From: Entomortierella parvispora E1425
Taxonomy: Eukaryota; Fungi; Mortierellomycota
Reading direction: 5' to 3'
Assembly: GCA_020891255.1 (NCBI GenBank)
Contig: BQFW01000013.1
Coordinates: 620,001 to 684,000, forward strand
DNA: 64,000 nucleotides
Shown: positions 45,509 to 61,449 of the stretch, one piece after another
Layout: each line of letters opens with the position of its first letter
How positions within the stretch are numbered: position 1 is the stretch's first letter
Notes under the pieces: generated by a model
Seen by the model: only the letters and a program-made list of their open reading frames with translations
Database searches by the model: none
What the model was told of the DNA's origin: nothing
Program-made: the position numbers and the translations under genes

Positions 45509-47059
45509 TCAAAGACATCTTGCATATTGGTGGAGCAGATTTTGAATGTGGTTGGCCTCTAGCTTGACAAGACTTTTGTCCCTGTCGGCAACCCTCACAG
45601 TGCTTGGAGTGAAAGAGAGAACGTGCTGTTGGACTGATTTCCTTTCATCCTTGCTGAACTCGTCTTCATGGTCCATGAGCACCAAGTGTCTTTTCGACTC
45701 TAACATCGAACGTTCCTCCGAGGAAAATCTCTTGAGGACCGCGTGGTAATACTTCTGATGTTGGATTACATCCATCTGCTCCTTGCCCACCATGTTGAAA
45801 ATGAACCCAACACTTGGGCCAGTTTCCATGAAATCATGAAGAAGACTTGCCATTGCGAGATCGAATACATCAACTCTCCCGTTCCTGGTCGTGATAACAA
45901 CGAAAATCAGGTACAGATGACTTCTGTTGTTCAACTCGCTGTACAGACTCAGGAAATAACGCGAGTAGCCCTCTTCTTCCGAGACTCTGGCACCTGGTAT
46001 GTCCACCAACTGAAACTGTTTCCCGTCGAGGAGCACATTTGCGGTTGAAGAGGCAGTCTCCCTGTCATCTGAATAGCCGGTAACAAATCTTCCGCCAAGC
46101 GCGTTAAGTATGGTACTTTTCCCTCTGCCAGTGTTCCCGATGAGGATGATCCTTGGCGATGTATCGTCAACTAATTGAGGATGTGAGGGTATATGGCCGG
46201 CCGTAGGATCTGATGATGATTTAGTCCTATGAAAGATATCTCCAAATCTGAATGAGAACGGTCGTTGGACTGTCTTTGTCGATCCGTGGCTCTGTGGGCT
46301 CTTCTCCATTGGACTTGGGAAATGCGGACTCCTCCTCGTAGCGCCATTATCTCTGCCAGATGCTTCTTGATCAAGTTGTGCATGAACTGTCCCCTTGGGT
46401 AAAATGGAAAGTTTGCGAGTCACTCGTTCCAGCTCGTTTGACGCCATCCTGCGAACACGAACTTGTTTTGGCTCGAACGATAGGACGAACCTTTGGACCC
46501 GTTCGCAGTCCTCCTTGTTGAACATTCCGACATGTCGGCATAGGGCTAGATGGTTGTGTGCCACAAGGTTTAGGTCCGGGTCGATTCGCTGAAGTGCCAT
46601 CCTCAGCTTATCATTAGCCGCGGCGAGGATAGCTGGCTTAATCTGAGTAAGGATCACTCCTATCCGAGGTCCATGCTCAATGCTATCCAAAAAGTATTTC
46701 ATGAGCGCCAGGTCGCTAATCTCGATTGCCCCGTCCAGTCGAGGTTTGATGACCAAAAAGACCACGTAATGTTGTCCATTGTTCAAAGTTTCATGTAGCT
46801 TTTCGAGATGTCGGTCAATGGCACTCCCGCCTAGCATCCTGTCTCCTGGTGCTTTGTGGTCCCTGATTCCCGGCATATCAACCAACAAGAGGCGGCGGTC
46901 ATGGCAAGGTACCTCTTGAGGTTCTCCTACGGCCATACCGTAAACAGCACTGAATCCATGATTAAACTTTCCCCCGAGAGCATTGTGGAGGGTACTCTTG
47001 CCGACGCCAGGATCTCCTACAAAGACGACCGAGGTGAGGATTGGATCTTCTAACACCAT
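45509..47059 (-). CDS. Paraseptin-like P-loop GTPase, two-domain fusion (C-type + B-type domain); gene D of the array
   Basis: Intronless. Domain 1: GDPGVGKST..LVDMPG..KPRLDGAIE..LTQ. Domain 2: GNTGRGKST..LVDIPG..TRNGRVD. The start is taken at MVLEDP (47059). Confidence 0.88.
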   Translation of the reverse strand: MVLEDPILTSVVFVGDPGVGKSTLHNALGGKFNHGFSAVYGMAVGEPQEVPCHDRRLLLVDMPGIRDHKAPGDRMLGGSAIDRHLEKLHETLNNGQHYVVFLVIKPRLDGAIEISDLALMKYFLDSIEHGPRIGVILTQIKPAILAAANDKLRMALQRIDPDLNLVAHNHLALCRHVGMFNKEDCERVQRFVLSFEPKQVRVRRMASNELERVTRKLSILPKGTVHAQLDQEASGRDNGATRRSPHFPSPMEKSPQSHGSTKTVQRPFSFRFGDIFHRTKSSSDPTAGHIPSHPQLVDDTSPRIILIGNTGRGKSTILNALGGRFVTGYSDDRETASSTANVLLDGKQFQLVDIPGARVSEEEGYSRYFLSLYSELNNRSHLYLIFVVITTRNGRVDVFDLAMASLLHDFMETGPSVGFIFNMVGKEQMDVIQHQKYYHAVLKRFSSEERSMLESKRHLVLMDHEDEFSKDERKSVQQHVLSFTPSTVRVADRDKSLVKLEANHIQNLLHQYARCL

Positions 47060-47889
47060 GTATTGTTTGTTGAGAGGACGACGCACGTCTCTGACGGCGA
47101 AGAGAACGTGTGAAGTGGCGAAAGGATGGTTGCTGCTGTAGGTAAAGAAGGAAGAAAGAGCGGAAAAGAGAATCAAAACCACGCTCAGTGCTCCTTTTTG
47201 CTCTGCGTGAACCTTGTTGCAGCAAAGAAGAAAACCCTTTGCACTGCCGCATGGTCGGAAAACACAAGAGGTGTTGCGATGCCGACTCAAAAACTGGAAA
47301 AAAAACAATGACTTTGCCTTCCAGCTTGCCTTGCCCTTCTTTTGTCTTAACTATCAGCCAAGTCATTGTTCCTTGCCACTGCTTTGCTACTCTGTGGTCA
47401 TCGTAAGTAATAGATACCAATGTTGGCAAGAAGGAGAGGGGCCGAGAGAGAGGAGACGTTGCTTGAAATCCTGCAGACGCGGCTCGTTCAGAAGGCGGAC
47501 AAAGAGACCAGAACATGCCTGCCCTCGGACGGCGGCGCTATGCTAAGCCACCAATCACACAGCCTCGTCGCGTCCCTTGGTCTCATTCATTGTCATTCTC
47601 TTTCATTTGTTGTCCTTCATTGTCTTTTATTGCTCTGCCCACATTGTAAACCTTCCCCGTCAGCTTTTGCCCTTTTATGAGCACTCGGTCCACCATGCGA
47701 AACTCTTGACGATAACTGCTTCCTGAACGCACAGTATGTATCTTCGTGATCATTCTCAAAAGCCTAGTAAAGCCCTTTCAGTAAGGTGCTGTGGGACGAA
47801 TTCGTAGTTGGCCAAAGCTCTCAACCTATGGGTATGTATCCCATACCATACCAAGGGCTCGTGTGTATTACAAATAAAAATGTGAATTT

Positions 47890-48643
47890 CTACGAGAACA
47901 GCTTTCTAAAAAATGATCGAATATTCCTCCAGGCCTTTGAGACCATGTTGTAGATCTGGACCTGTCTTGGCTCGAAAGAAAGGATGTAGTCCTGAACTCT
48001 TTGACGATCATGGACGCTAAAGTTCTCATCATGGTCGCGAAGGATAAGGGCGTTCTTTTGCCGAAGTGACCTCAGATCGGCTCCACCGCGTTTCAAAACC
48101 GACATGACGTTTTCGAGGTAACTCGGATGCTGGACTGCAGCGAGATCCCGCTGGCGGATCTGGGTCAAAATTAAGCCCACGAGAGGACCTCTATTGAACT
48201 TCTCGAGGAAAAGCTGATGAGTGACAAGTCTCCGTTGTCAATCTAATGGGCAAAACCATGCATCAGCGAACATGTAGGCGAGTTGAAATAGAAAATTGCA
48301 CCCCGTACATTCAGAATCATACCCGTCCATTGCGTGGAGTGAGAACAAAGAAGATAACATAGGCGTGTCCGTCGTTCAGTCGGTCTTGCAAGGTCTTCAA
48401 GTTTCGATCCATCACGTTGTCTTTTCCGCTTCCGTTGCTGTTATCACTGATCCCAGGCACATCAACCAGACGAAGGTGCCTTCGATCGCAATACACCTGC
48501 TGTGGCTCCCCTACATTCATACCCTGTACAGGAGAAAAGCCGCTTGGGAATGTTCCACCAAGGGCGTTGTGCAGGGTGCTCTTCCCGACCCCTGGATTGC
48601 CGACAAAGACGACGGACGTCAAGCCGGTGCGCAAGGAATTCAT
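47890..48643 (-). pseudogene. Paraseptin-like GTPase, C-type (C3), with one intron and an apparent 1-nt frameshift or alternative acceptor
   Basis: Exon 1 GNPGVGKSTLHN..DVPG..PRNGR, then GTATGA donor at 48322. The AG at 48243 gives IDNGDLSLI and then loses frame by 1 nt. A downstream CAG at 48214 restores the frame into GPLVGLILTQ. Confidence 0.75.
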
Positions 48644-48773
48644 CTGAGTTTTTAGTGGGATGGCGGGGTTGGTTCAAGAAAGCGGTGCAGTGAGCGAAAG
48701 TGATAGGTAAGATTGGAAATGGATGCCTATATTCAAAGGGATGCTAACAAGAAGGAGAAAAAAAAAAAGACTC

Positions 48774-48789
48774 ATATAAACGTTTATAT
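48774..48789. promoter_or_regulatory. Perfect 16-bp palindrome ATATAAACGTTTATAT, candidate TATA box of C3
   Basis: Lies 131 bp upstream of the C3 ATG and reads TATAAA on both strands. Confidence 0.4.
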
Positions 48790-48944
48790 TACTTTGCCTC
48801 AGACCCACCCCCTTTGCCTAGACTCTTCCGATACTACTCTCATATGATTTCTAATCTGCGCCGTTCAATCGAGTCTAACCAACTTAGCCTCGAGAAGCCA
48901 TGCCTGCCACCAAACGGCAAAGTCGGGCAATAATGAGGCTTTAT

Positions 48945-49631
48945 TCAATGGAAAATAATCATCTTGAGCAACTTGAGGAGCATGCGCAATGCGGTTGCAA
49001 TCATGTTACGGATCTGAACCTGACGTGGCGTGAACTTGGTAATATAGCTTCTTATATGGTAGCGGTCGTCGTCCGAAAACCCCTCGTCATGGTCGCGGAG
49101 GACAAGAGGTCCACGGCTTGTCAGGAACCTTAGGTCGGCATTGTTGTTTTTCATGATCTGAATGATCCTGGAAAAGTAAGTAGGGGACTGGATATGGATG
49201 AGGTCCCTGGCTTTGATTTGGGTGATAATCAGTCCCACGGTTGGGCCGTTATCCATTTTTTCGAGGACCAGCTGCATCATTGCGAGGTCACTGGGATCCA
49301 CACGGCCATTTCGAGGACTAATAACAAAGAAGATTACATAGGCATGCCCATCGTTCAGTGCCTCACGCAACATCTTCAGATGGTTGTCGGTAACGCTGTC
49401 ACCGCTGCTGCTCCCTTCCTTCGCCGAGTCGTATATTCCGGGCATATCCACAAGCCGGTAGGGCTTTTGATCGATGATGACATCTTGTTTCGAAACGTAT
49501 GTTGTCAGTCCAGAGGTACAACTATATCCGCTCAAAAAGTTTCCTCCGAGAGTATTGAGAATAGAACTCTTCCCAACACCGGGATTTCCAATCAAAAGAA
49601 TGGCAGTCTTGCCGTCAATGAGGGATCTCAT
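48945..49631 (-). CDS. Paraseptin-like GTPase, B-type (B3), 228 aa
   Basis: GNPGVGKSSILN, GLTT, LVDMPG, SPRNGRVD, IITQ, NNADLRFL and a hydrophobic C-terminal helix. Confidence 0.9.
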   Translation of the reverse strand: MRSLIDGKTAILLIGNPGVGKSSILNTLGGNFLSGYSCTSGLTTYVSKQDVIIDQKPYRLVDMPGIYDSAKEGSSSGDSVTDNHLKMLREALNDGHAYVIFFVISPRNGRVDPSDLAMMQLVLEKMDNGPTVGLIITQIKARDLIHIQSPTYFSRIIQIMKNNNADLRFLTSRGPLVLRDHDEGFSDDDRYHIRSYITKFTPRQVQIRNMIATALRMLLKLLKMIIFH

Positions 49632-50105
49632 CTTGATTTCTCAACAAGTTGAAAACTGCAGGAGGGGAAGTAAGTGGGACGACGAAGAGGGCGGTTTGCG
49701 CACGATAATGGCTGAAAAGGCGGGCTAATTATACGGAAATCGATTATTCTTCCGCGGGTGAACGGCGTACTTCTTGGTGCGCCTTTCACCCCTTGGCTTT
49801 GCCAGGAGAGGGTATGCCTGCCTTCTCACCTTTGCCTTCCAGCTCTGTCAAGTGATTCTTCGTCAATCCAGGTTCTTTTTTTTAAAAAAAAAAAAATCTT
49901 CCGCTAGCGTCAATTGATCGAGATGTCAGGTCCTTCGCCTTCGTTGCTTTGCCTCATTATAAACCCTTCCGCTGTCCCTGTGCCTCATTTTTCCCCTGCC
50001 GACATGTTTGCCACGCTTGATGTGCATCTCGAGGAGGAGTTCAATGGGTCGGATAAAATAATCACCTTGGCGCACACCATCCTCCTCCATTTCATAAATA
50101 CACAT

Positions 50106-50137
<32 letters not shown>

Positions 50138-50204
50138 GCCTGTTCAAAGTTTTCCCTTTAATAAAGTGTAGCACAGTTGAGGTACGGGGACTTTTACATG
50201 TCCT

Positions 50205-51221
50205 CTAGAACACCCTCTTGAGCATTTCGAGATATCGCGCGACAATGGCAGCAACCATGTCGTGAATGACAACCTTCTTTGGCTTGAACGAAAGGACATA
50301 TTTTTTGATCTTGGTCACCTCTTCTGGACTGAACGTGTCCTCGTGATCAACCAAAACCAAGGTGCTATTTCGATCAATGAAGCGCAAGTTTTCGCATTCC
50401 GCACCTTCCAGCAGCTTCAAAACCAAAGCCGTATAGGAGGGGGACTGGATTTTTTCATAATCTCTCTTGCGGATCTGAGTTAAGATCAAACCAATGAAGG
50501 GGCCTTGTTCGATATTGTCCATGACAAGCTTCATGACGGCCAAATCGGCGTTGTCCACCCTACCGTTCCGAGGTGAAATAACAAAGAAGACCAAGAAGGG
50601 ACTGCCATCGTTCAAGGTGCTGTGGAGCATTTGAAGATGGCGAATGATCTCCTCAGCTCTTCCTTCTCCGGCATCATAGATGCCCGGCATGTCGACCAAA
50701 CGGATTACACTGTTACCAAGCTCAATATATTGCTCGGAAACATCAGTCGTCAAACCGGACACCTGGTGGTATCCATGATTGAATTTTCCCCCAAGTGCGC
50801 TTAGGAGGGCGCTTTTGCCCACGCCTGGGTTGCCTATAAACACCACAGACGTGACATCCTTGACATGGCCGTGCACAGGTGTAGACTGTGGTGCGCGGTT
50901 TCGAGCATGCGGTTGCTGATGTTGGTTCTGCGACTGCAGTTGGTGTGGTTGGTGTGGTTGTTGCGGTTGTTGCGGTTGTTGCGGTTCTTGCGGTTGCATT
51001 TGGCCCGCGGTCTTGTTTGTGGGTGTTGAATATGAAACAACAGGATGGATAAGAGGATCATGGTCAAAAGCCTTGGACATCGCTGGCTTCTGGGATGAAT
51101 TGGGGTGCTCATCGACAGATTTAGGATGCTGTATTTTGTCGCGCCCACGAGGCAAGGACGTATCAGTCGACTGACCGTTGCCGCTGCGATTCCAAAGGAG
51201 CTTTGAATAGCTGGATGGCAT
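50205..51221 (-). CDS. Paraseptin-like GTPase, A-type (A3), 338 aa with Q/P-rich N-terminal extension
   Basis: GNPGVGKSALL, GLTT, LVDMPGIY, SPRNGRVD, DNIEQGP and AECEN. Confidence 0.9.
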   Translation of the reverse strand: MPSSYSKLLWNRSGNGQSTDTSLPRGRDKIQHPKSVDEHPNSSQKPAMSKAFDHDPLIHPVVSYSTPTNKTAGQMQPQEPQQPQQPQQPHQPHQLQSQNQHQQPHARNRAPQSTPVHGHVKDVTSVVFIGNPGVGKSALLSALGGKFNHGYHQVSGLTTDVSEQYIELGNSVIRLVDMPGIYDAGEGRAEEIIRHLQMLHSTLNDGSPFLVFFVISPRNGRVDNADLAVMKLVMDNIEQGPFIGLILTQIRKRDYEKIQSPSYTALVLKLLEGAECENLRFIDRNSTLVLVDHEDTFSPEEVTKIKKYVLSFKPKKVVIHDMVAAIVARYLEMLKRVF

Positions 51222-51349
51222 CGATGAAGATGGTGCGTTGAATAGGGAAGTATTGAGGAGGACTTAGAAGAGAGAAGTGTAGATGAGACGGGAAATTGAC
51301 TGTGGATGACTGACGATGTTTGTCTTTTAAGCGATTGCAGGACGACGAC

Positions 51350-51381
<32 letters not shown>

Positions 51382-51675
51382 ATCATTGGGCCGAGCTGAG
51401 TCCCTCCTCTTTGCCAAACTCCTTTGCCAGCTGACTGTTCACCTCCAGCTTTGCCTACCATACCATGTTGCGTACCCAACCGGTTGCTGGAACGAAGGTT
51501 AGAGGCTAAAGACGCAGGTGCTTTGCCATCCTTACTTCCTTAGTTGGGAAAGATGATGGGTGCGGTCGAGATTGCGCCGTCCTCGTCGCCCCCAGAATAA
51601 AATATGATCTTCAGCTTGCATCGCGATTGAGTAACGGTTTGTTGAGTGAATTAGGATGCTGGAAGGCATATTCGT

Positions 51676-53055
51676 TTATTCTAAATGAAAGATCTTGCTG
51701 AGCAGCTTCTTCACCTTCACCATTTTACGGACGGAGAGAAAAGATAGGACATAGTCTTGGATGGAGACAATGTCTTGGTCACTAAAAAAACCACCTTCAT
51801 GATCAGCAAGAACAAGGGGTCCACGACTTGAAAGGACTCGAATGTTCGCTCCACTCTGCTTGAGAACGTCCACCATGGGCCGACTAGAGTAAGGGTCTCG
51901 AGCCTTACTGATATCACGCAACCCGACTTGATTTAGAACTAATCCTACGACTGGCCCCCTCTTCATACTGCTCAGAACAGTATGCATCATAGTAAGGTCA
52001 CCGGGATCCACGCGACCGTTTCGAGGGCAAATAACAAAGAAAATAGCATAGGGTTGTCCGTCGTTCAGCCTGCTATTGAGCTCCATCGAAAGTGGTTCAC
52101 AAGAGCCAAAATATTGGCCGTCACTGTTGTCGAGGATGCCAGGGCAATCGACCAGCCGCAGGTGATTGTTCCCACAGTGAATGTATTGCTGTTCGCACTC
52201 AAGTCTTGTCAATTGCCTGAATCCGGAATGGAAAGTCGCTCCGAGAGCCTTGTGAAGGGTGGTTTTGCCAACACCAGGCCTACCGATAAAGATCACTGAT
52301 TCTCGGCATGTAGTGCCTGCATCCTTGACATCGTCCTGCGCGTCTAACAGCGACAGGTCTTGCAAGACCTGCTGCCCCGTCGCTACCGACATCTGATCAA
52401 ACCCTTCGCTCGGCGACCTTGCCTGAGTCGGAATTGCACGGATACGAACTTGCCGCGGCTCAAACCCTAGGATATAATTCCGAATATCTTCGATTTCATT
52501 GTCATCGAACTTTTCTTTGTGTTTACGAAGGAAAAGATATCTCTCATCGGCCAAGAACTCCAGGTTTGCTCCTACTCCCATCAGCGTTGTTCGCACGAAT
52601 CCGGGAGCTGTAACGATGTCAAAGCTGCTGTTGTATATCTGTGTCATAATCAGCCCAATTTGAGGCCCCTCTTCCATGCCTTCGAGAATCAGCTTCATGA
52701 GCATCAGGTCCGGGCTTTGGATTGTCCCGTTTCGCCAGGGCGCGATCACAAAGAAAACGACGCAGTTGCCTCCATTGTTAAGTCTGTCTCGGATTATCCC
52801 GAGATTGAAATCAACTGAATTCTTGACCGTTGCCGTGCACCCAGCGGTGGGATGGTCATTGACCCCTGGGGTATCGACCAGGTATAAACTATGTTGACGG
52901 CAAGCCACCCGTTGAGGATCTCCCACGGGCATTCCTGTGACTTCATGGTACCCACTTTCAAATGATCCTCCAAGAGCATTGTGAAGGGCGCTTTTGCCGA
53001 CTCCGGGGTTTCCGATGAATATGACTGAGGTGATATTCGAGGCTTCGATTTCCAT
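51676..53055 (-). CDS. Paraseptin-like GTPase, two-domain fusion (C-type + divergent C-type) (C2)
   Basis: Domain 1: GNPGVGKSALHN..GMPVGDPQ..DTPG..WRNGTIQ. Domain 2: GRPGVGKTTLHK..DCPG..PRNGRVD. The start is taken at MEIEAS (53055). Confidence 0.88.
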   Translation of the reverse strand: MEIEASNITSVIFIGNPGVGKSALHNALGGSFESGYHEVTGMPVGDPQRVACRQHSLYLVDTPGVNDHPTAGCTATVKNSVDFNLGIIRDRLNNGGNCVVFFVIAPWRNGTIQSPDLMLMKLILEGMEEGPQIGLIMTQIYNSSFDIVTAPGFVRTTLMGVGANLEFLADERYLFLRKHKEKFDDNEIEDIRNYILGFEPRQVRIRAIPTQARSPSEGFDQMSVATGQQVLQDLSLLDAQDDVKDAGTTCRESVIFIGRPGVGKTTLHKALGATFHSGFRQLTRLECEQQYIHCGNNHLRLVDCPGILDNSDGQYFGSCEPLSMELNSRLNDGQPYAIFFVICPRNGRVDPGDLTMMHTVLSSMKRGPVVGLVLNQVGLRDISKARDPYSSRPMVDVLKQSGANIRVLSSRGPLVLADHEGGFFSDQDIVSIQDYVLSFLSVRKMVKVKKLLSKIFHLE

Positions 53056-53682
53056 GAGTGCGTGGCCGCTGAAGGATCGTTTTTGTGGATGGTTGGTTGG
53101 TGAGTAAAACTTGAAAAAGAGAAAAAACAGGGGACAGGGAGTAAAAAGAGAGAGCAATTTGCTTCGCCTTTTTTTTTTTTTTTTTTTTTTGTGGCAGCCA
53201 GCCACCTACAGGGGTGTGGCACCAACGTCGTCGGGCATTGAGGACATGGGAGCGTTCATCCGTTCATTATCTCTTGCTCCTTGCACGCTGAAGTCGATTT
53301 ACTGAGGTCAATGGTCCATCAGTTCTTTTTTTTTATGGTTGGGGATGTCTTGGATTAATTAAGATCGCGTGGGGCTTTCGTGTGTTCAAGTTCACAGGTT
53401 TTGCCGCAGTAGCCAGACCTCCTTCTATGCTCTTTATGGTTCGGGGAATCCTTTGCTCCTGAGATTAAAACTACTGCTTCGGACCTTGTTGTTCAGACTG
53501 AGATGTGGGACAGACAAGAAGCAATAATGATCTTTGGTCATTCGATGCTCTGCCTCTTGTTTGCCTCCCCCGAGATGTTTGCGTTTTGAGCATTCCCCTC
53601 TGTAATCACCCCGCTAGTCTAGACTAAATCGATGCCAGGCCACGGTTCAATGCACTGTGAAAAGCTAGGATAAAAACTTGCT

Positions 53683-54372
53683 TTAATGCATTGCCTGCTG
53701 CAAGATAGCCATGAGCAGCATGAGAATGATACGAAGGGACTTGGCCAACATGTCGTGGATTTGGACCTCTTTCGGTTTGAACCCGAGGATATAATGCTTG
53801 ATGTCGTGCCGATCCTGCTCAGAGAACCCATCTTCGTGGTCTGCAAGCACCAAATGTGGCTGTTTGTCAAGAAAAGTCAAATCGGCCTTGTTTTCCTCCA
53901 GAACCTTGCGAACTGCAGCAATGTAAGACTCGGACTGCACTTGATCAAGGTGTCCTGGCATGACTTGATTGATAATCAACCCAACCTTGGGGCCCTTCTT
54001 CATACTGTTGAGGACGAGCTGCATCAAAGCCAAAGTGCCAGGCTCAATGCGACCGTTTCTTGGACTGATAACAAAGAAGATTGCGCACACAAGTCCGTCG
54101 TTCATGGCCTCCTGCAACATCTTTAGCCGAATATTGGTCCTCTCGTCTCCCTGTCCTCCCTCTCCTGGATCACTGATTCCGGGTGTGTCGACTAGTCGGA
54201 AGCTCCGGTCTTCGATTTTAACATCATTGTGGGAGACACGCGTTGTCATGCCATGAAGGTCGCTGAATCCACTTGGAAAGTCCCCTCCAAGAGCATTAAG
54301 GATGGCGCTTTTCCCGGCTCCTGGATTGCCGACCATAATAACGGACGCCTTCTTGGTGAAAAAGGTATTCAT
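53683..54372 (-). CDS. Paraseptin-like GTPase, B-type (B2), 229 aa
   Basis: GNPGAGKSAILN, GMTT, FRLVDTPG, SPRNGRIE, NKADLTFL and a very hydrophobic C-terminus. Confidence 0.9.
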   Translation of the reverse strand: MNTFFTKKASVIMVGNPGAGKSAILNALGGDFPSGFSDLHGMTTRVSHNDVKIEDRSFRLVDTPGISDPGEGGQGDERTNIRLKMLQEAMNDGLVCAIFFVISPRNGRIEPGTLALMQLVLNSMKKGPKVGLIINQVMPGHLDQVQSESYIAAVRKVLEENKADLTFLDKQPHLVLADHEDGFSEQDRHDIKHYILGFKPKEVQIHDMLAKSLRIILMLLMAILQQAMH

Positions 54373-54709
54373 TGTGCAGCGACGGTGTTGTGTAGTGGTT
54401 GTCCGAGATGACTTGAGGGAGGATGGTCGTTAGATCGAGGGGCGAAGGCTGTGGGAGAAAAGAAAAAGGAGATGAGTCGACTCAGAGAGAGCAAGGAAGG
54501 AAGCAGAGAGCAGAGAGCGCCCGACTTTGCCTTTTTGTTTTTGTTTCCATTGCTTGTGATCAGCTTTGCCATTTTTCATGCACCACGAGCTTGAACAACA
54601 TGCTCTCCGCGGGCGACTCCTCAGTGCAGTCATTGGCAAAAAGGCTCAGTCGCAAAAAACAACAAAGGGCAAAGGGGCAACAAGTTAATTCTTTTATTGA
54701 GGACTCTCT

Positions 54710-55633
54710 TCACGGCTGGAGCACCTGTCGAAGAGTCTCAAAATAATGGGCCACCACGCCACTGACCAAGTCCTGGACCTGTATTCTCTTTGGTTGAAAG
54801 CTCAATACGTAGTTCCTGATCTCGTCCTTCTCTGCTTGACTGAATCCGATTTTCTCGACATGGTTACAAAGAACCAACGTCTGCTCAGCATAGTCGAGCA
54901 GGTTCATGTTTTTGCAATCTGCACCCCGCAACAGATTATACAATGAGGATGTGTAGGTGGGAGTCTGGACACTTGCAACATTGACCTTTCGAATCTGTGT
55001 GAATATCAACCCTACTGTCGGGCCGCTCTCGATATTGTCAAGGACGAGCTTCAAAAGAGCCAAGTCGCTGGAGTCGATCCTTCCTCGTCTGGGTGAAATG
55101 ACAAAGAAAAGCACATAGTCATCGCCGTTGTTCAAAGTCGCTTGAAGCAACTCAAGATTCCGCAAAAAGTTTCCTTCCTTATTTTCTCTTCCAGAGTCAT
55201 AGATCCCTGGCATATCCACCAGTCGAATGGGCCGGCCTTTGAGTTCAAGCTCTTGCGTCGTCGCCTGCCTTGTCAAACCGGATACTCGACTAAAGCCACT
55301 GTCAAAGGTTCCGCCGAGCGCATTAAGCAGGGCACTCTTCCCTACCCCAGGGTTTCCCACAAATATCACCGAGGTTGTGTGCGTAGCCAGATCACTTGAT
55401 GGCGCCTCAGGCGGGCTCGTCAGCCTTCGAAGTGCACGAGCAGGTTGAGGTGTTGGGTCCTGATGAATGTCCCTTTGCACAGACACGTTCGAGGGGGCCG
55501 TGCTTTTCCGTCGGCCATCGGGGCTTCCTACTGTAGACTGACCAGCACCGGACGCCGCAGTCAAAGTCGTAGCGGCTTTAAACTTGTCCGCAAGTCGAAA
55601 CTTCTTCTTTAATCCTGAAAACAGGCCTGTCAT
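54710..55633 (-). CDS. Paraseptin-like GTPase, A-type (A2), 307 aa
   Basis: GNPGVGKSALL, GLTR, LVDMPGIY, SPRRGRID, DNIESGP and ADCKN. Confidence 0.9.
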   Translation of the reverse strand: MTGLFSGLKKKFRLADKFKAATTLTAASGAGQSTVGSPDGRRKSTAPSNVSVQRDIHQDPTPQPARALRRLTSPPEAPSSDLATHTTSVIFVGNPGVGKSALLNALGGTFDSGFSRVSGLTRQATTQELELKGRPIRLVDMPGIYDSGRENKEGNFLRNLELLQATLNNGDDYVLFFVISPRRGRIDSSDLALLKLVLDNIESGPTVGLIFTQIRKVNVASVQTPTYTSSLYNLLRGADCKNMNLLDYAEQTLVLCNHVEKIGFSQAEKDEIRNYVLSFQPKRIQVQDLVSGVVAHYFETLRQVLQP

Positions 55634-55847
55634 CTCAAAGGTGTCACGGTGGAAAGTTGTTGTGAAGGAAAGGAAAAAGAGGGAGCATTCGAGTGTGGGA
55701 CTGAGCCTGGAAAATGAGCCTCAAAAAAAAAAAAAAAAAAAAGTCCCTTCAGCCACATTGGCTTCGCCACTTTCCCTTTTCTATTTTCGCCAGGGATACG
55801 ATGATTGACAATCATACGACTGAGTACGGGCTGCTTTATTCTTTTAC

Positions 55848-56540
55848 TCACTGAAACATTCTCTGGAAGAAAGCGAGAAGCCTTCTCCATAGAGAGGACA
55901 CCATGCTCTCGACATGCACTTGTCGTGGTTCGAACGACAGGATGTAGTCCCTGATATCTTCTACCTCTTGATCAGTGAAGCTGTCTTCGTGCGTTCCAAG
56001 GACAAGAGCTTGCCTCTTCGAGAGGGATTCCAAGTTCGCACCACCTTGCCTCAGAACATCCATCACCTGCTCCAGGTAGGTGGTCTGTTTAACGGATTCC
56101 AGGTGCTTTCTCAAAACTTGAGTCAAGATCAACCCCACAATCGGACCCTCGTTCATTTTGCTGAGCACAAGCTGGATCAGGGCCAGATCGCTGGGATCAA
56201 TACGTCCATTCCTCGGCGTGATAACAAAGAAGATCACGTAGGTATTGCCGTCGTTCAACCTGTTCTTGAGCAACATGAGATGCTCATCCGTGACGCTGTC
56301 CCCGCCTGCTCCACTGTTATCGTTAATCCCTGGGATGTCGACCAACCGTAATCTTCTTCTGTTGCACTCGACAATCTGCGGTTCGCCCACCCCCATCCCC
56401 TGAACAGACGAAAATCCGTTTTCGAATTTTGCACCAAGGGCATTGTGTAGGGTACTCTTTCCGACTCCAGGGTTACCGATAAAAGCAACGGACATTGGAG
56501 GACCTGGCGCGGCCGATCGACTCAGGAGGGCAGCAAGCAT
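55848..56540 (-). CDS. Paraseptin-like GTPase, C-type (C1)
   Basis: GNPGVGKSTLHN, GMGVGEPQIVEC, LVDIPG, TPRNGRID and ILTQ. The start is taken at MLAALL (56540). Confidence 0.9.
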   Translation of the reverse strand: MLAALLSRSAAPGPPMSVAFIGNPGVGKSTLHNALGAKFENGFSSVQGMGVGEPQIVECNRRRLRLVDIPGINDNSGAGGDSVTDEHLMLLKNRLNDGNTYVIFFVITPRNGRIDPSDLALIQLVLSKMNEGPIVGLILTQVLRKHLESVKQTTYLEQVMDVLRQGGANLESLSKRQALVLGTHEDSFTDQEVEDIRDYILSFEPRQVHVESMVSSLWRRLLAFFQRMFQ

Positions 56541-56660
56541 GGTAGATAAATGGGAGGGTTGGCTCTTGAACAGTAACGGTGAGAGAGATAGAAACCCCCT
56601 TTTTTTTTTTGAGCGAGCGGGCTCCATGTCAATTGCTTTGCCCTTGCATCTCTAAGATGC

Positions 56661-56710
56661 TTTGCCTTGCTGTGCCTTGATGTGCCTTGCTGTGCCTTGC
56701 TTTGCCTTGT
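56661..56710 (+). repeat. 10-bp tandem repeat (TGCCTTGCTG-like) x about 5 in the B1-C1 intergenic region
   Basis: tttgccttgc tgtgccttga tgtgccttgc tgtgccttgc tttgccttgt is directly visible. Confidence 0.85.
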
Positions 56711-56868
56711 GCTTCCAAGATACTTCGCCATTGTTCGTACAGGTCATCTCTGTATGGATTGACTACAACAATGTGGTTCGGCACAAGTACCTCATGGCCA
56801 ACTTCGTCAAAAGTCATTCGACACTGTGTATTTGGTAAAACATATGTAGTAACTGCGAGGGGAAAGAC

Positions 56869-57630
56869 TCAATTGCCATAAGCCCCTGAGAGCAAGAGCA
56901 TGACATTGTGGGCAGCTATCTCTTTGAAGGCCTGGAAGAGGACAAACAGTGCAGAGGCAACCATGTCACGGATTTTGATCTGTGTCGGGACGAATCCAAG
57001 GATGTAGTTTTGGATCGAAAGTCGCTCTTCTCTAGTAAAGCCATCTTCATGACCACGAAGGACTAAAGGTCCGGTCTGCTTTAGAAACCTTAGGTCGGCA
57101 TTGTTGTTCCTCAACACTTGAAGAATGTTGTCATAGTAGTCTCCCGACTCAACTTGGCTCATATGGGCCTTCCTGATCTGAGTAATGATTAATCCCACCA
57201 AAGGACCCTCATCCATGCTGCTGAGGACCAACTGCATCAACGCCAAGTCGCCAGGACTCACTCTGCCGCTGCGTGGAGTAATAACAAAGAAGATTACGTG
57301 GGCGTGTCCATCATTCAGCGTGTCGTGGAGCATACCCAAGTGGCGATCGGTTGTCGTGTCAGCGGCATGAGTGTATTCACCTCCTGCGGAATCTTGAATA
57401 CCAGGTATGTCCACGAGTCGGAAATGCCTCTTGCAAAGAGTGACATCTTGTGTGGTGACAGTTTGAGTCAATCCACTCACACTGCTGTACCCACTCTGAA
57501 AGTTTCCGCCTAAAGCATTGAGGATGGCACTTTTTCCGCAGCCTGGGTTCCCAATCATCACCACGCCGGTTCTGCCGGTCAAAAGCGTGTCCACTGCGAC
57601 GGTTCTCCAAATAGTATCTAGTAAGGTCAT
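56869..57630 (-). CDS. Paraseptin-like GTPase, B-type (B1), 253 aa
   Basis: GNPGCGKSAILN, GLTQ, FRLVDIPG, TPRSGRVS, NNADLRFL and a hydrophobic C-terminus. Confidence 0.9.
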   Translation of the reverse strand: MTLLDTIWRTVAVDTLLTGRTGVVMIGNPGCGKSAILNALGGNFQSGYSSVSGLTQTVTTQDVTLCKRHFRLVDIPGIQDSAGGEYTHAADTTTDRHLGMLHDTLNDGHAHVIFFVITPRSGRVSPGDLALMQLVLSSMDEGPLVGLIITQIRKAHMSQVESGDYYDNILQVLRNNNADLRFLKQTGPLVLRGHEDGFTREERLSIQNYILGFVPTQIKIRDMVASALFVLFQAFKEIAAHNVMLLLSGAYGN

Positions 57631-57987
57631 AGAAGAGAAGGTTCAGAGGCGTTGGGAATAAAGAAGTGAGAGTCTTGATTCTGACACATCAAAAGTCTCT
57701 CTGGCCCTGGTGCTTTTCCTTGACTTTGCCCTTGGCCCTCAAAGCAACTAATGTGCTTGCATCAACCCCCCTGTCACCTCTTTGCCTTGCCATTCATGCA
57801 ATAAAATCAATGAAGCTTTGGTCGTGGCAAAGAAACGGCATCCAACCATGCAAACCCCTGCATGACGGAAGCCGTGCACTTATCAGGCGCCTTTGATGGT
57901 TTTGGCGAAGCCCAAAGCCAAGCTGAGGCATTCTTGTCTTCACAAAGAGTAATTTAATAAAGAGGGCAAACCGAAAAGCTACAAGCA

Positions 57988-58869
57988 CTAGAAGGCCCTC
58001 TTGAGGAGCTCAAAGTAACTAGAGACCATGCTCACCACCATGTCGCGGACGACCATCCTTCTCGGGGTAAAGCTGAGAACGTAGTTTTCGATCCACTCCA
58101 CCTCGAAATCCTCAAACTTGTCGAGATCCTCCCTGTGCATGCACAAAACCAAGGTGTTGTGGGCAGTGTCAAGCATCGCCGCGTTTTTGCACTCTGCTTT
58201 TTTGAGTCGATTATGTATCGCAGTTGTGTAGTCAGGATCTTGCACGCTGGGATAATGCTTTTGAGCAACCTGAGTAATAATCAACCCCACGGTCGGGCCT
58301 TGCTCGATGTTGTCTAGAACGAGCTTCATCAAAGCTAGATCACCGTTGTCAATTCTGCCATTACGGGGACTGATAACGAAAAAAATCGCATGCTCATCTC
58401 CGTTGTTCAAGACCGTGTGAAGGGTCTCAAGGTTCTTCATAAACTCTACGGATTTCCCTTCACCCGTTTCGTAAACCCCAGGCATGTCCACCAAATCGAG
58501 GACTCGACCATGACGCTTGATCTCGGTTCGATATGATCTCGTGGTTGTTGTCAATCCGCCAACGTCGCTATAACCACTTTTGAAATCCCCTCCGAGAGCG
58601 TTGAGTAGTGCGCTTTTGCCAACGCCAGGATTGCCCACGAAAATGATCGAGCTTGGCTCCTTCCGTGGGTGAGATGACGGTACTGTTCTTTTCCGGTTTG
58701 GCAGCGGAGGCAACGGGCTTTGGCCATTGTCATTCCTTGGCGTGTGGCTCAGAGCGTGATTTCCAAACTGTGTGTGCTCCATGGGAGGCGTCAACGGCTG
58801 AGGACCGGAAAACACTGAAGACACTGAAGATATTATGTTCCTGATTGTGGGTGATCTAGGAGGCTCCAT
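57988..58869 (-). CDS. Paraseptin-like GTPase, A-type (A1), 293 aa
   Basis: GNPGVGKSALL, GLTT, LVDMPGVY, SPRNGRID, DNIEQGP and AECKN. Confidence 0.9.
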   Translation of the reverse strand: MEPPRSPTIRNIISSVSSVFSGPQPLTPPMEHTQFGNHALSHTPRNDNGQSPLPPLPNRKRTVPSSHPRKEPSSIIFVGNPGVGKSALLNALGGDFKSGYSDVGGLTTTTRSYRTEIKRHGRVLDLVDMPGVYETGEGKSVEFMKNLETLHTVLNNGDEHAIFFVISPRNGRIDNGDLALMKLVLDNIEQGPTVGLIITQVAQKHYPSVQDPDYTTAIHNRLKKAECKNAAMLDTAHNTLVLCMHREDLDKFEDFEVEWIENYVLSFTPRRMVVRDMVVSMVSSYFELLKRAF

Positions 58870-59181: not shown

Positions 59182-61449
59182 TCACCTTCGATCGTTTCCG
59201 ACCTGATTATGACGACCGCCACGGCGGTCTTGGTCCCTGTAGATATCACGACCTCCTCTTCTGTCTCGGCTATCTGAAGATCCCCGGTCGTATCCTGATC
59301 TTCTGTCATCACCCTGTCTGTACGAACCGGAAGACGCGCCTCTTGAAGATCTATCATAAGGTCGGTCGTCGCGCCTGGTAGAAGATGAAGGACCTGTTGA
59401 CCTACGATCTCTGTCTTTGCTATCAGCTTGCGAGAAACGGTTGTCCCTCTTGATTTTGTCCAGCTTCTTTTGTTGCTCCATAGCGAGAGCCGCTGTGGTT
59501 GAAGCAGCTTTGTTGAGAGGGTCGATTACAATATATTCATCAGCATCATCTCTCTTTGCTGCCAAAGACACCTCTTTTCCTTTGAGATCTTTTTCAAAGA
59601 CAAGTTTGTGCTGCATCCAACCTATATCATCATCCGACTCGTCCTCAGGTTCGCCCTCCTCAGCACTGCCATTCTCAACGTCCGATGATGCCTTGCGCTT
59701 TTTCTTAGATGATGTTGCGGTTGTGTCCACGCAAGATTCACAGGATGGAACGCCATGAATTCTGCATGGTGGCGCGTCATTCTTTTTCGGTGCAGGCTTG
59801 GGCTCTGGCTCCTTAGCAACCGAGAACAGCCTGGCCTCAAATGACGACATTTTGTCCAACAGTTCCCGATCCTTGCCCAAAGATGCTGACTTTGACGATT
59901 TTGATCGTTTGCTGCCCTTGCTCTCAGCTCGGGTCGTGTACTTCTCCCGCTCCAACTGCAAGAGTGAGATTTTTGAGGAACCACTCTTCTTCTTGGTTTC
60001 TGCCTCGCCCTCAGCGCCGCGATTGTGCATCTTTCGAATGTCGCCTTCCAATTTTTGAATTTCCTGCCGGACGCGTTCTCCTGCTGTTAGTGGCGCAGCA
60101 ACAGGTACTGATGCGGTTGGTGCTGGGGTGGTTTCGACTGCAGAATCATTTCCCTGGGAACTTTCACTTTCTCGTGCCATCCTAGCCTTCTTCATCTTTT
60201 CGCGTACTTGATCCCTCATCCTTTGATCAAAAGCGTTTACACTTTCATTGTCCTCTGGTGGTCCTGAAGTAGGGGCTGCGGATCTCTCTTTTTCTTTTCC
60301 AGAGTCCAACGGGGTGTTGTCTCCTGCTTCGTCTTGGCGATCAGAGCCCGATTCGCTCTCATCGCGCCTCAGACTTGGATCCACCTCTCGACTCAATGTT
60401 GGATCATCCTCCAAGACGTCGTGGCTGCTAAGCATCTTTTTCTTGATTGGTTTAGAATCTGCAGAGCCTTCGCCGTCCTCCTCAGGTGCATCGTCCTCGA
60501 ATGAAAGCAATGCCACGTTCCTTTCACAATCATGAAGGAAGACAGGATAAAATAAGTACAAACGCAAAAAAAAAAAAGAAAGCGTGTCAAAAAAAAACAA
60601 ATAATAAAAAAAGATCACACACACTTACTTTTTCAACTTTTTCTGTCTTTCAGGCTTTTTTGCTGCCTCCAATTCCCTGAGTCTAGCGGCTTCCAGCTCA
60701 CGCCTTGATACTCTGGGCACGATATCATCGAACGGGTTCACGACAATTGTGCAATTAACGATTTTCGGTGGGTACAATGGTCTTTCGTCCGAGTCAACCT
60801 CCAAGCTTCCAATCTTTAACACGTTGAAAATCGTGTCTCCAGCGACCTAAAACCAATGACCAATTGATTAGTAGAGAGAAAGATGGAGCGACAATACTTT
60901 CTCTTTGAAGGATCGGCTTTTTCTTTCGCGTGAAAAAATTCAGACCCCCCATTCAGGACGGCAGCACTAACCTTGCCAAAGATGGTGTGCTTATTTTGTA
61001 GCTCCATTGTGGCGTCCAGGGTAATAAAGAACTGACTCTTATTATCATTGGGAACGCCAGAGTTGGCCATGGCTACTAATCCACGTCGGACGAATCGGAG
61101 ACGAGAGTGAAACTCATCCTGAAAGGGCTTCCCGCCATCCAGGCATGATTCGCCTCCAAGTCCAGTGCCCTCGGGATCGCCGCCCTGGATAATGAATCCT
61201 GCAACGATACGGTGGAAAATGGTGTCATTGTAATAGCCCTCCATGCATAGCTGAACAAAGTTGCGGCACGCTTTAGGCGCCTCCTTGGGCCACAGTTCTA
61301 TGGAGATGTCTCCATAGGTCGAATGAAGAATGACTTTGCCACTATATACACAAAAAAAAAGTCAGTCAGGCAGTTGGGAACGATAAAGACAGTCTGTAAA
61401 ACATGTACACGTACTTTGTGTGAGGCTCAAGAAGGTAGATATTACTCAT
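59182..61449 (-). CDS. CWC27: Spliceosome-associated cyclophilin-like protein CWC27; multi-exon
   Basis: MSNIYLLEP, ELWPKEAPKACRNFVQLCMEGYY, FHSRLRFVRRGLVAMAN, SQFFITLD..KHTIFGKV, NPFDDIVPR, NVALLSF and HKLVFEKD. Confidence 0.95.

What the first reader, a model, noticed from the sequence alone, without database searches (positions are those of the whole stretch)
45509..58869. Tandem array of 10 genes (12 domains) of an unnamed AIG1/GIMAP/Toc34-like GTPase family: candidate fungal immune or membrane-remodelling system
Seen: ten co-oriented minus-strand genes, 200-850 bp apart, each with G1 GxPGxGKS, G3 DxPG, a conserved FFVIxPRNGR(I/V)D box, a T/N-Q at G4 and a C-terminal helix. Paralogs are strongly diverged but nearly all intact. 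Known: the box matches the arginine-finger region of paraseptin GTPases (Toc34 YRVD, GIMAP GRFT), which are dimerisation-activated. GIMAP and plant AIG1/IAN genes also occur as tandem clusters tied to immunity. Inference: a defence, endosymbiont-control or allorecognition locus. I do not recognise a described fungal system of this form.
Basis: partly seen in the sequence, partly recalled or inferred. Interest (0 to 1): 0.92.

Follow-up and report, generated by a model that had tools for sequence, protein, structure and literature searches.

The report
Triplicated AIG1/septin-like GTPase gene cassette
Ten neighbouring genes in a Mortierella-type soil fungus encode a little-studied branch of the AIG1/GIMAP and septin-like GTPases, built as a three-gene set copied three times and kept intact by selection; an immune role is only an analogy so far.

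Summary
Ten co-oriented minus-strand genes (12 G domains) lie at 45509-58869 and carry the stated motifs. Nine are intact. g2 has a strain-specific 1-nt frameshift.

The proteins are a divergent, Mortierellaceae-centred branch of the AIG1/GIMAP ("paraseptin") GTPases, not housekeeping Era/Der GTPases. Pfam AIG1 scores are borderline. Profile-profile comparison, the exhaustive HMM search and ESM Atlas neighbours all point to AIG1/GIMAP. The box arginine aligns with the GIMAP box arginine and with the septin R-finger position.

New here:
- The array is an A-B-C cassette triplicated en bloc, plus a two-domain gene.
- It is collinear, gene for gene, with a related species' contig, and lies between the same flanking genes in Gryganskiella.
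- Every orthologue pair shows purifying selection (dN/dS 0.05-0.36).
- C-class domains mostly lack the switch-I threonine. The first domains of both two-domain proteins lack the arginine, and their orthologues do too.

This resembles septin-style pairing of active and inactive subunits. Amphipathic or hydrophobic C-terminal helices suggest membrane binding.

The defence or allorecognition reading is untested: no RNA data were available, and there is no gene-wide diversifying selection. I rate it a new variant of a known kind, of moderate interest. Other first-stage notes of this scan on this same stretch made the cassette, arginine and threonine points, and I tested them here. One further note reports a second such array elsewhere in this genome, which I did not check.

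The parts
57988..58869 (-). g10, class A GTPase (P/S-rich N-terminal extension, one G domain, amphipathic C-terminal helix)
   Evidence: ORF; motifs; Pfam MMR_HSR1 48.7 bits, AIG1 27.0 bits; class A clade; orthologue on L002 78% aa, dN/dS 0.17-0.22
56869..57630 (-). g9, class B GTPase (short N-terminus, hydrophobic C-terminal helix)
   Evidence: orthologue on L002 split into two ORFs, dN/dS 0.07-0.24
55848..56627 (-). g8, class C GTPase (switch-I Thr replaced: MGVG)
   Evidence: class C clade 100/99; dN/dS 0.19
54710..55633 (-). g7, class A GTPase
   Evidence: (AIG1 30.3 bits, above the cutoff of 27); dN/dS 0.12-0.14
53683..54372 (-). g6, class B GTPase
   Evidence: 91% aa identity to the L002 orthologue, dN/dS 0.07-0.10
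51676..53055 (-). g5, two-domain protein C(a)-C(b); domain a lacks both the box Arg (NGT) and the switch-I Thr; domain b keeps PRNGR
   Evidence: fastest-evolving member, dN/dS 0.31-0.36; AF2 model pLDDT 68.8, pTM 0.47
50205..51221 (-). g4, class A GTPase with Q/P-rich N-terminal extension
   Evidence: dN/dS 0.14-0.21
48945..49631 (-). g3, class B GTPase (modelled: AF2 pLDDT 86.6)
47890..48643 (-). g2, class C GTPase; 80-nt intron 48243-48322; 1-nt deletion at 48214/48215 shifts the frame in this strain
   Evidence: L002 orthologue intact and intronless; strain X3 has the extra base; X1 agrees with the window; dN/dS 0.05-0.10
45509..47059 (-). g1, two-domain protein: C(a) domain lacking the box Arg (DGA), plus a divergent second domain (GNTGRGKS, NMV) that keeps TRNGR
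   Evidence: Gryganskiella orthologue P0018 has the same architecture and the same Arg loss
59182..61244 (-). upstream flank: cyclophilin-type PPIase gene (conserved synteny anchor)
   Evidence: Pfam Pro_isomerase 7.6e-30; same neighbour on L002 and in Gryganskiella L006
42354..45260 (+). downstream flank: anoctamin gene (conserved synteny anchor)
   Evidence: Pfam Anoctamin on three ORFs; same neighbour in Gryganskiella L007

Best explanation
The locus encodes a Mortierellaceae-centred, divergent subfamily of AIG1/GIMAP-type, septin-like ('paraseptin') P-loop GTPases. An ancestral three-gene cassette (classes A, B, C) was duplicated en bloc to give A-B-C, A-B-CC, A-B-C, followed by a two-domain gene. 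This happened before the split from Gryganskiella, and each copy has since been kept by purifying selection. Likely mechanism (inferred): the proteins dimerise across the nucleotide-binding face, and the box arginine (NGR) reaches into the partner's site to trigger hydrolysis, as in GIMAP7, Toc34 and ancestral septins. Classes A and B keep both the switch-I threonine and the arginine, so they are probably active. Class C domains mostly lack the threonine, so they are probably slow or locked partners. In the two-domain proteins the first domain has also lost the arginine, giving a built-in asymmetric pair. Paralogue-specific amphipathic (A, C) or hydrophobic (B) C-terminal helices probably place the assemblies on membranes. 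The biological role (organelle or membrane homeostasis versus cell-autonomous defence) is not shown.
For: Family: hhalign A2 vs GIMAP8-like gives probability 96.2%, E 2.5e-9, with the Arg aligned. ESM Atlas neighbours by features and by structure all carry AIG1+MMR_HSR1, TM 0.65-0.73. AFDB cluster hits include AIG1-type G domains, TM 0.65-0.71. The next homologue shell hits AIG1 in 47/50 members. The exhaustive HMM search reaches fish GIMAP8-like, red-alga AIG1-type and oomycete proteins. The box segment matches septins Cdc3 and SEPT2, with the Arg on the residue after the septin His, which is the ancestral R-finger site (PMC11238149). Cassette: trees give class C 100/99, class A 95/50 and class B 88/78. 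Groupings are congruent: g10+(g7,Gry), g9+(g6,Gry), g8+g5b. Conservation: L002 is collinear for all ten genes. Flanks are shared with Gryganskiella. dN/dS is 0.05-0.36 at dS 0.6-1.2. Catalytic-residue pattern; the G(L/M)T threonine aligns with the EngA GVT G2 threonine. Arg loss in first domains is conserved in L002, P0017 and P0018. C-terminal helices: muH 0.42-0.79, net positive charge, class B KD 1.56-1.83. They are 78-91% conserved between orthologues but only 15-19% between paralogues. More distant relatives carry clear hydrophobic segments after each G domain.
Against: No expression, binding or localisation data exist; no RNA run was listed. Dimerisation is inferred only. The AF2 model of the two-domain protein has pTM 0.47, so the domain arrangement is unreliable. 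The G4 aspartate that reads guanine is absent from all 12 domains, so GTP specificity is unproven. Pfam AIG1 reaches its cutoff in only 3 of 10 genes. PDB fold searches are flat across TRAFAC GTPases, Z 13-14. The A/B/C classes are not recovered in Linnemannia zychae or Mortierella sp. GBA30, whose copies group by genus. One C-class orthologue (L002 g2) has a threonine at the switch-I site.
Confidence: 0.6

Rival explanations
1. One reading: the array is a cell-autonomous immune, endosymbiont-control or allorecognition locus, analogous to GIMAP and plant IAN clusters.
For: AIG1/GIMAP kinship. Tandem arrays in several genera with different copy numbers and contexts. Genus-specific expansions and pseudogenes, and a strain-specific frameshift in g2. 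Relatives occur in the amoeba endosymbiont Amoebophilus. A Rhizophagus AIG1 gene is reported as induced when two isolates coexist (PMC7490403).
Against: All ten genes are 1:1 collinear between two species, with dN/dS 0.05-0.36 and no gene-wide positive selection. No sensor, repeat, NLR or death domains are present. PADLOC hits are noise-level. No expression data are available. I found no paper on this family in four searches.
Confidence: 0.2
2. The proteins are P-loop NTPases that no longer use GTP specifically (ATP or another nucleotide), or they are nucleotide-binding scaffolds, because the G4 aspartate is missing throughout.
For: The G4 position reads TQ(I/V)x, NQVx or NMVx with no Asp in any of the 12 domains or the outgroups. 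hhalign homology to GIMAP stops at the box.
Against: G1, G3, the switch-I Thr and the box are well conserved. From memory, not tested here, Toc34 also lacks a canonical NKxD yet binds GTP.
Confidence: 0.12
3. They are housekeeping ribosome-assembly GTPases (Era, Der/EngA, YihA) that happen to be duplicated.
For: The best Pfam model is MMR_HSR1. The best PDB sequence hits are Der/EngA. Era ranks high in Foldseek Swiss-Prot.
Against: NCBIfam scores are far below the cutoffs, for example Der 33.9 vs 306.7 and Era 21 vs 237. Matches cover only G1-G3. There is no KH or other RNA-binding domain. Close homologues occur only in Mortierellaceae. The genes are multi-copy and class-differentiated.
Confidence: 0.02
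4. The array is a neutrally decaying or selfish expansion without function.
For: g2 is frameshifted in this strain. The L002 orthologues of g3 and g9 are split. There is a pseudogene in Mortierella sp. GBA30.
Against: dN/dS is 0.05-0.36 for every pair, including g2. Catalytic motifs are conserved. The locus is syntenic across three lineages.
Confidence: 0.03

Closest known systems
AIG1 / GIMAP (IAN) GTPases (Pfam PF04548)
   Same: Homologous G domain from G1 to the conserved box, with the box arginine aligned. C-terminal helical extension; GIMAP7 aligns over model residues 8-221. Tandem gene clusters and multi-G-domain members, like GIMAP8. Nearest neighbours by language-model features and by structure.
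   Different: Pfam AIG1 score is borderline or below cutoff in 7 of 10 genes. G4 lacks the Asp of GIMAP's T(K/R)xD. No detectable homology beyond the box in hhalign. Three differentiated classes arranged as a repeated cassette. No known link to immunity.
Septins (PF00735), especially the logic of R-finger and switch-I Thr loss after duplication (PMC11238149)
   Same: The G3-to-G4 segment (FFVISPRNGRxDPxDLxxM) matches the septin segment (ISPxGHxLKPLDxxFM), with the Arg at the ancestral R-finger position. Some paralogues lose the Thr and/or the Arg. Amphipathic C-terminal helices are present.
   Different: Pfam Septin score is below cutoff (20.8 vs 26.2). No AKAD G4. The septin unique element and the NC interface were not looked for. 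No evidence of filaments.
Toc34/Toc33 and Toc159 chloroplast import GTPases
   Same: Paraseptin fold; Toc34 gave the best TM by query among PDB chains (0.55). From memory, Toc34 has an RVD-type arginine after beta4, a tail anchor and a non-canonical G4.
   Different: TIGR00991 and TIGR00993 scores are far below cutoff (11-17 bits vs 421 and 660). The host is a fungus without plastids.
Glomeromycotina AIG1-Hint proteins (MEROPS C46 expansion; PMC8778642, PMC7490403)
   Same: A lineage-specific expansion of AIG1-type GTPases in a neighbouring Mucoromycota subphylum.
   Different: No Hint domain here. The architecture and gene organisation differ.
Der/EngA tandem-G-domain GTPases
   Same: Two G domains in one chain (g1, g5). 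Best PDB sequence hits, E about 1e-16 summed over two domains.
   Different: Similarity is limited to G1-G3. No KH-like domain. NCBIfam cutoff missed by about 270 bits.

Membership tests
AIG1/GIMAP (PF04548) | Score at or above Pfam's gathering cutoff (27 bits) | tested here: inconclusive
   g7 30.3, g5 27.9 (two domains summed) and g10 27.0 reach it. g9 26.9, g1 26.1, g6 24.3, g3 24.0, g4 21.9 and g2 17.9 do not. g8 has no hit at E<=1.
AIG1/GIMAP (PF04548) | Conserved box between G3 and G4: a hydrophobic strand followed by G/D-R-(F/Y/I)-(T/D) with acidic residues | tested here: met
   hhalign aligns ...YVIFFVISPRNG-RVDPSD with ...HVFLLVI--RLDvRFTEEE of GIMAP8-like domains, probability 96%. 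The box is present in 10 of 12 domains.
AIG1/GIMAP (PF04548) | G4 motif T/N-(K/R/H)-x-D | tested here: not met
   All 12 domains read TQ(I/V)x, NQVx or NMVx with no Asp at the fourth place. Fish GIMAP8-like domains read T(R/K)GD.
AIG1/GIMAP (PF04548) | Nearest relatives outside the lineage are AIG1-type proteins | tested here: met
   with 73, 28 (47/50), and 51 (10/10 structural rows carry PF04548).
AIG1/GIMAP (PF04548) | G-interface dimer with trans arginine finger | not testable with these tools
   No multimer prediction was available. The single-chain model of two-domain g5 has pTM 0.47.
Septin (PF00735) | Pfam gathering cutoff (26.2 bits) and G4 AKAD | tested here: not met
   The best Septin score is 20.8 bits, for g3. 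G4 is TQIx. Only the box segment resembles septins (E 0.03).
Septin (PF00735) | Septin unique element and NC interface (alpha0, polybasic region) | not tested
   These were not examined. The model ends in a single helix at 212-227.
Era / Der(EngA) / YihA housekeeping GTPases | NCBIfam equivalog cutoffs and an RNA-binding (KH-type) domain | tested here: not met
   Der scores 30.9-38.4 vs 306.7, Era 17-28 vs 237, YsxC 16-27 vs 124. There is no extra domain.
Toc34 / Toc159 | TIGR00991 / TIGR00993 cutoffs | tested here: not met
   Scores are 11-17 bits vs 421.6 and 660.7.
Fungal NLR / STAND immune receptors | NACHT or NB-ARC domain plus C-terminal repeats and an N-terminal effector domain | tested here: not met
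   Only P-loop-level hits to nSTAND3 and NACHT, below cutoff, and no repeats.

The most novel reading that the evidence does not exclude
Within the AIG1 clade, Mortierellaceae evolved, in parallel with septins, an obligate hetero-oligomeric membrane GTPase machine. It would be made of two active classes (A, B) and one hydrolysis-dead class (C, including self-contained asymmetric tandem dimers), encoded as a repeated A-B-C cassette, and it would act in cell-autonomous control of intracellular bacteria or non-self.
Probability: 0.1. Interest if true: 0.8.

Novelty: new variant of a known kind. Interest (0 to 1): 0.5.

Why it matters
AIG1/GIMAP GTPases are linked to immunity in vertebrates, plants, corals, snails and amoebae, yet their mechanism is poorly understood. 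In fungi they are almost unstudied. This locus offers a compact natural experiment. It holds three differentiated classes with a clear pattern of kept and lost catalytic residues, including two proteins that look like hard-wired asymmetric dimers. All are conserved under selection and sit in culturable, transformable soil fungi that often host endobacteria. If the septin-like division into active and inactive subunits holds, that logic would have arisen more than once in the paraseptin superfamily. It would also give a tractable system for asking what AIG1-type GTPases do on membranes.

Tried and rejected
1. RNA evidence: the look-up of sequencing runs listed no RNA run for the 5.5-kb stretch. 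For g6, only DNA or unknown-kind runs were listed.
The presence of g6-g10 in strain X3 is therefore unknown. X3 contigs covered only 47800-49867, and the tool states that a hole proves nothing.
3. The AF2 model of two-domain g5, meant to show a pseudo-dimer, gave pTM 0.47 and a disordered linker. It is unusable for the interface.
4. Foldseek against PDB and Swiss-Prot, and VIA-align, cannot separate AIG1 from Era, Nog1, Arf or SRbeta; scores are flat.
6. PADLOC gave only weak P-loop-level hits to LeoA, LeoBC and mad8.
7. I first typed genes of Linnemannia zychae and Mortierella sp. GBA30 as A, B or C by best BLAST hit. The careful tree shows they group by genus. I therefore dropped the idea that the A-B-C trio is universal in the family.
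8. Homopolymer tracts upstream of several genes are no more frequent than in the rest of the window: 43 runs of 9 or more bases.
9. Four literature searches found no description of this family.


Full report
OBSERVATION

One search lists ten co-oriented minus-strand ORFs between 45509 and 58869. I number them g1 (45509-47059) to g10 (57988-58869). Two of them, g1 and g5, contain two G domains, giving 12 domains. Intergenic gaps are 214-830 bp.

A motif scan and alignments confirm the motifs:
- G1 is GxPGxGK[ST]. The variants are GNTGRGKS in g1b and GRPGVGKT in g5b.
- G3 is DxPG in every domain.
- The box FFVIxPRNGR(I/V)D is present in 10 of 12 domains.
- At the G4 position, 9 domains read TQ(I/V), 2 read NQV and 1 reads NMV.

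The AF2 model of g3 (pLDDT 86.6) ends in a helix at 212-227. Paralogues are 34-55% identical to g3. Base composition matches the flanks.

One gene is broken. g2 has an 80-nt GT..AG intron (48243-48322) and a 1-nt deletion at 48214/48215. A second strain with the same species label carries the missing base, so g2 is intact there. Contigs from the source sample agree with the window.

WHAT FAMILY

Pfam places every gene in the generic MMR_HSR1 model, above its cutoff. AIG1 scores are borderline (17.9-30.3 bits against a cutoff of 27). Three genes reach the cutoff, and Septin is weaker still.

NCBIfam models for Der, Era, YihA, MnmE, FeoB and Toc34/159 are missed by hundreds of bits. That excludes the housekeeping families.

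PDB sequence hits (Der, GIMAP4/7/5, FeoB) cover only G1-G3. PDB and Swiss-Prot fold searches are flat across TRAFAC GTPases. Only GIMAP, IAN and Toc34 alignments extend into the C-terminal helix.

More discriminating evidence agrees on AIG1:
- AFDB cluster neighbours include AIG1-type G domains, with TM 0.65-0.71.
- All named ESM Atlas neighbours, by features and by structure, carry PF04548, including GIMAP7- and GIMAP8-like clusters.
- An exhaustive profile search found 56 representatives at E<1e-30 and 1137 at E<1e-10.
- The next homologue shell is Mortierellaceae plus Umbelopsis, and it hits AIG1 in 47 of 50 members.
- Beyond fungi, the best hits are fish GIMAP8-like proteins, a red-alga AIG1-type protein, an oomycete protein and Amoebophilus proteins.
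- hhalign of the family profile against GIMAP8-like domains gives probability 96.2%. It aligns the box arginine with the GIMAP box arginine, but homology is not detectable beyond the box.

Queried alone, the G3-to-G4 segment matches only septins (Cdc3, SEPT2; E about 0.03). The arginine then falls on the residue after the septin histidine. PMC11238149 identifies that position as the ancestral septin R-finger site. It is replaced by small residues in opisthokont groups 1-4.

The canonical G4 aspartate is absent from all 12 domains and from the outgroups. I therefore file the family as a divergent paraseptin branch closest to AIG1/GIMAP, not as a clean PF04548 member.

ARRAY HISTORY

Trees (quick, careful) resolve three classes among the window, L002 and Gryganskiella genes:
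- Class A: g10, g7, g4.
- Class B: g9, g6, g3.
- Class C: g8, g2, g5a, g5b, g1a, with support 100/99.

Read along the transcribed strand, the order is A-B-C, A-B-CC, A-B-C, then g1. Within-class groupings are congruent: g10 with g7, g9 with g6, g8 with g5b, and g4/g3/g2 lying outside. This is the pattern expected from en bloc duplication of a three-gene cassette.

Gryganskiella genes pair with g7, g6, g4, g3, g2 and g1. The triplication therefore predates that split, and Gryganskiella has lost some copies.

A 15.3-kb metagenome contig (L002) is collinear with the window for all ten genes plus the upstream cyclophilin gene. In Gryganskiella the array lies between the same cyclophilin and anoctamin genes.

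In Linnemannia zychae (five clustered genes) and Mortierella sp. GBA30 (three, one a pseudogene), the copies sit in other contexts and group by genus. At that depth the family expands independently in each genus.

SELECTION

For every window-L002 orthologue pair, dN/dS is 0.05-0.36 at dS 0.6-1.2. The cyclophilin flank gives 0.19-0.34. g5 is the fastest member.

Conservation peaks at G1, G3, the box and G4. The C-terminal helix is 78-91% conserved between orthologues but only 15-19% between paralogues. This indicates paralogue-specific constraint.

These results refute neutral decay and argue against gene-wide diversifying selection. Site-wise tests need more species.

MECHANISM (INFERRED)

The G(L/M)T threonine aligns with the G2 threonine of EngA. 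It is present in classes A and B and in the outgroups. It is replaced in C-class domains, with the exception of L002 g2.

The box arginine is kept everywhere except in the first domains of g1 and g5. The same loss is seen in their orthologues on L002 and in P0017 and P0018.

In septins, loss of the R-finger and of the switch-I threonine after duplication accompanies the shift to hetero-oligomers that mix active and locked subunits (PMC11238149). By analogy, I propose the following:
- The proteins form G-interface dimers with a trans arginine finger.
- Classes A and B are active, and class C is a slow or locked partner.
- The two-domain proteins are built-in asymmetric pairs.

C-terminal helices are amphipathic and basic in classes A and C, and near-transmembrane in hydrophobicity in class B. 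Distant relatives carry clear hydrophobic segments. This suggests membrane association.

None of this was tested directly. The two-domain AF2 model is unreliable (pTM 0.47).

BIOLOGICAL ROLE

The defence, endosymbiont-control or allorecognition idea rests on analogy. The supports are AIG1 kinship, clustering, genus-specific expansion, occasional pseudogenes, relatives in an amoeba endosymbiont, and a Rhizophagus AIG1 gene induced in non-self co-inoculation (PMC7490403).

Against it stand the strict 1:1 orthology under purifying selection, the absence of sensor or death domains, and noise-level PADLOC hits.

No RNA data could be obtained. I found no paper describing this family. The nearest report is the AIG1-Hint expansion in Glomeromycotina (PMC8778642).

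EARLIER NOTES OF THIS SCAN

Three other first-stage notes on this same stretch raised the A-B-C module, the arginine loss in first domains, and the threonine loss in class C. I tested all three here and they hold, with the L002 g2 exception. A fourth note reports another three-gene AIG1-like array elsewhere in this genome. I did not check it.

VERDICT

The immune interpretation is unproven. The added value is the cassette structure, its conservation, and the septin-like pattern of catalytic-residue loss. I rate it a new variant of a known kind, interest 0.5.

Noticed in passing
window 48243-48322 (g2): An 80-nt GT..AG intron with a CTGAT branch-like site interrupts the box codons of g2. It is present in this strain and in strain X3, but absent from the intact, intronless orthologue on L002. 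This looks like a recent intron gain (or a loss) in an otherwise intronless family.
   Followed up: partly
P0067 (Candidatus Amoebophilus asiaticus B3EU78); AFDB hits B3ET52 and B3ERL0: The amoeba endosymbiont Amoebophilus encodes two-G-domain proteins with lipoprotein-like N-termini, one of them with a U-box. They score 5e-31 against the Mortierellaceae profile and keep the 'AGRI..DL' box. This suggests eukaryote-like GTPases acquired by a symbiont.
   Followed up: partly
L002:3716-4496 and L002:12314-13038: The orthologues of g9 and g3 on the metagenome contig are each split into two ORFs. These are either frameshifts in that organism or assembly errors.
   Followed up: no
L001:11587-12168 (Mortierella sp. 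GBA30): A family member with four in-frame stops lies next to two intact copies. It is a pseudogene in a small three-gene cluster in a different genomic context.
   Followed up: partly
window 59182-61244 (-) and 42354-45260 (+): The array is bracketed by a cyclophilin-type PPIase gene with a long charged tail and by an anoctamin gene. The same two neighbours bracket the Gryganskiella array.
   Followed up: yes
same genome, another piece (note s1-173445): An earlier first-stage note reports a separate tandem array of three intronless AIG1/GIMAP-like GTPases elsewhere in this genome.
   Followed up: no
window 47800-49867 vs run X3: A run with the same species label differs by about 4-5% in nucleotide sequence over g2-g3. 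That is high for one species, so the label may cover more than one lineage.
   Followed up: no
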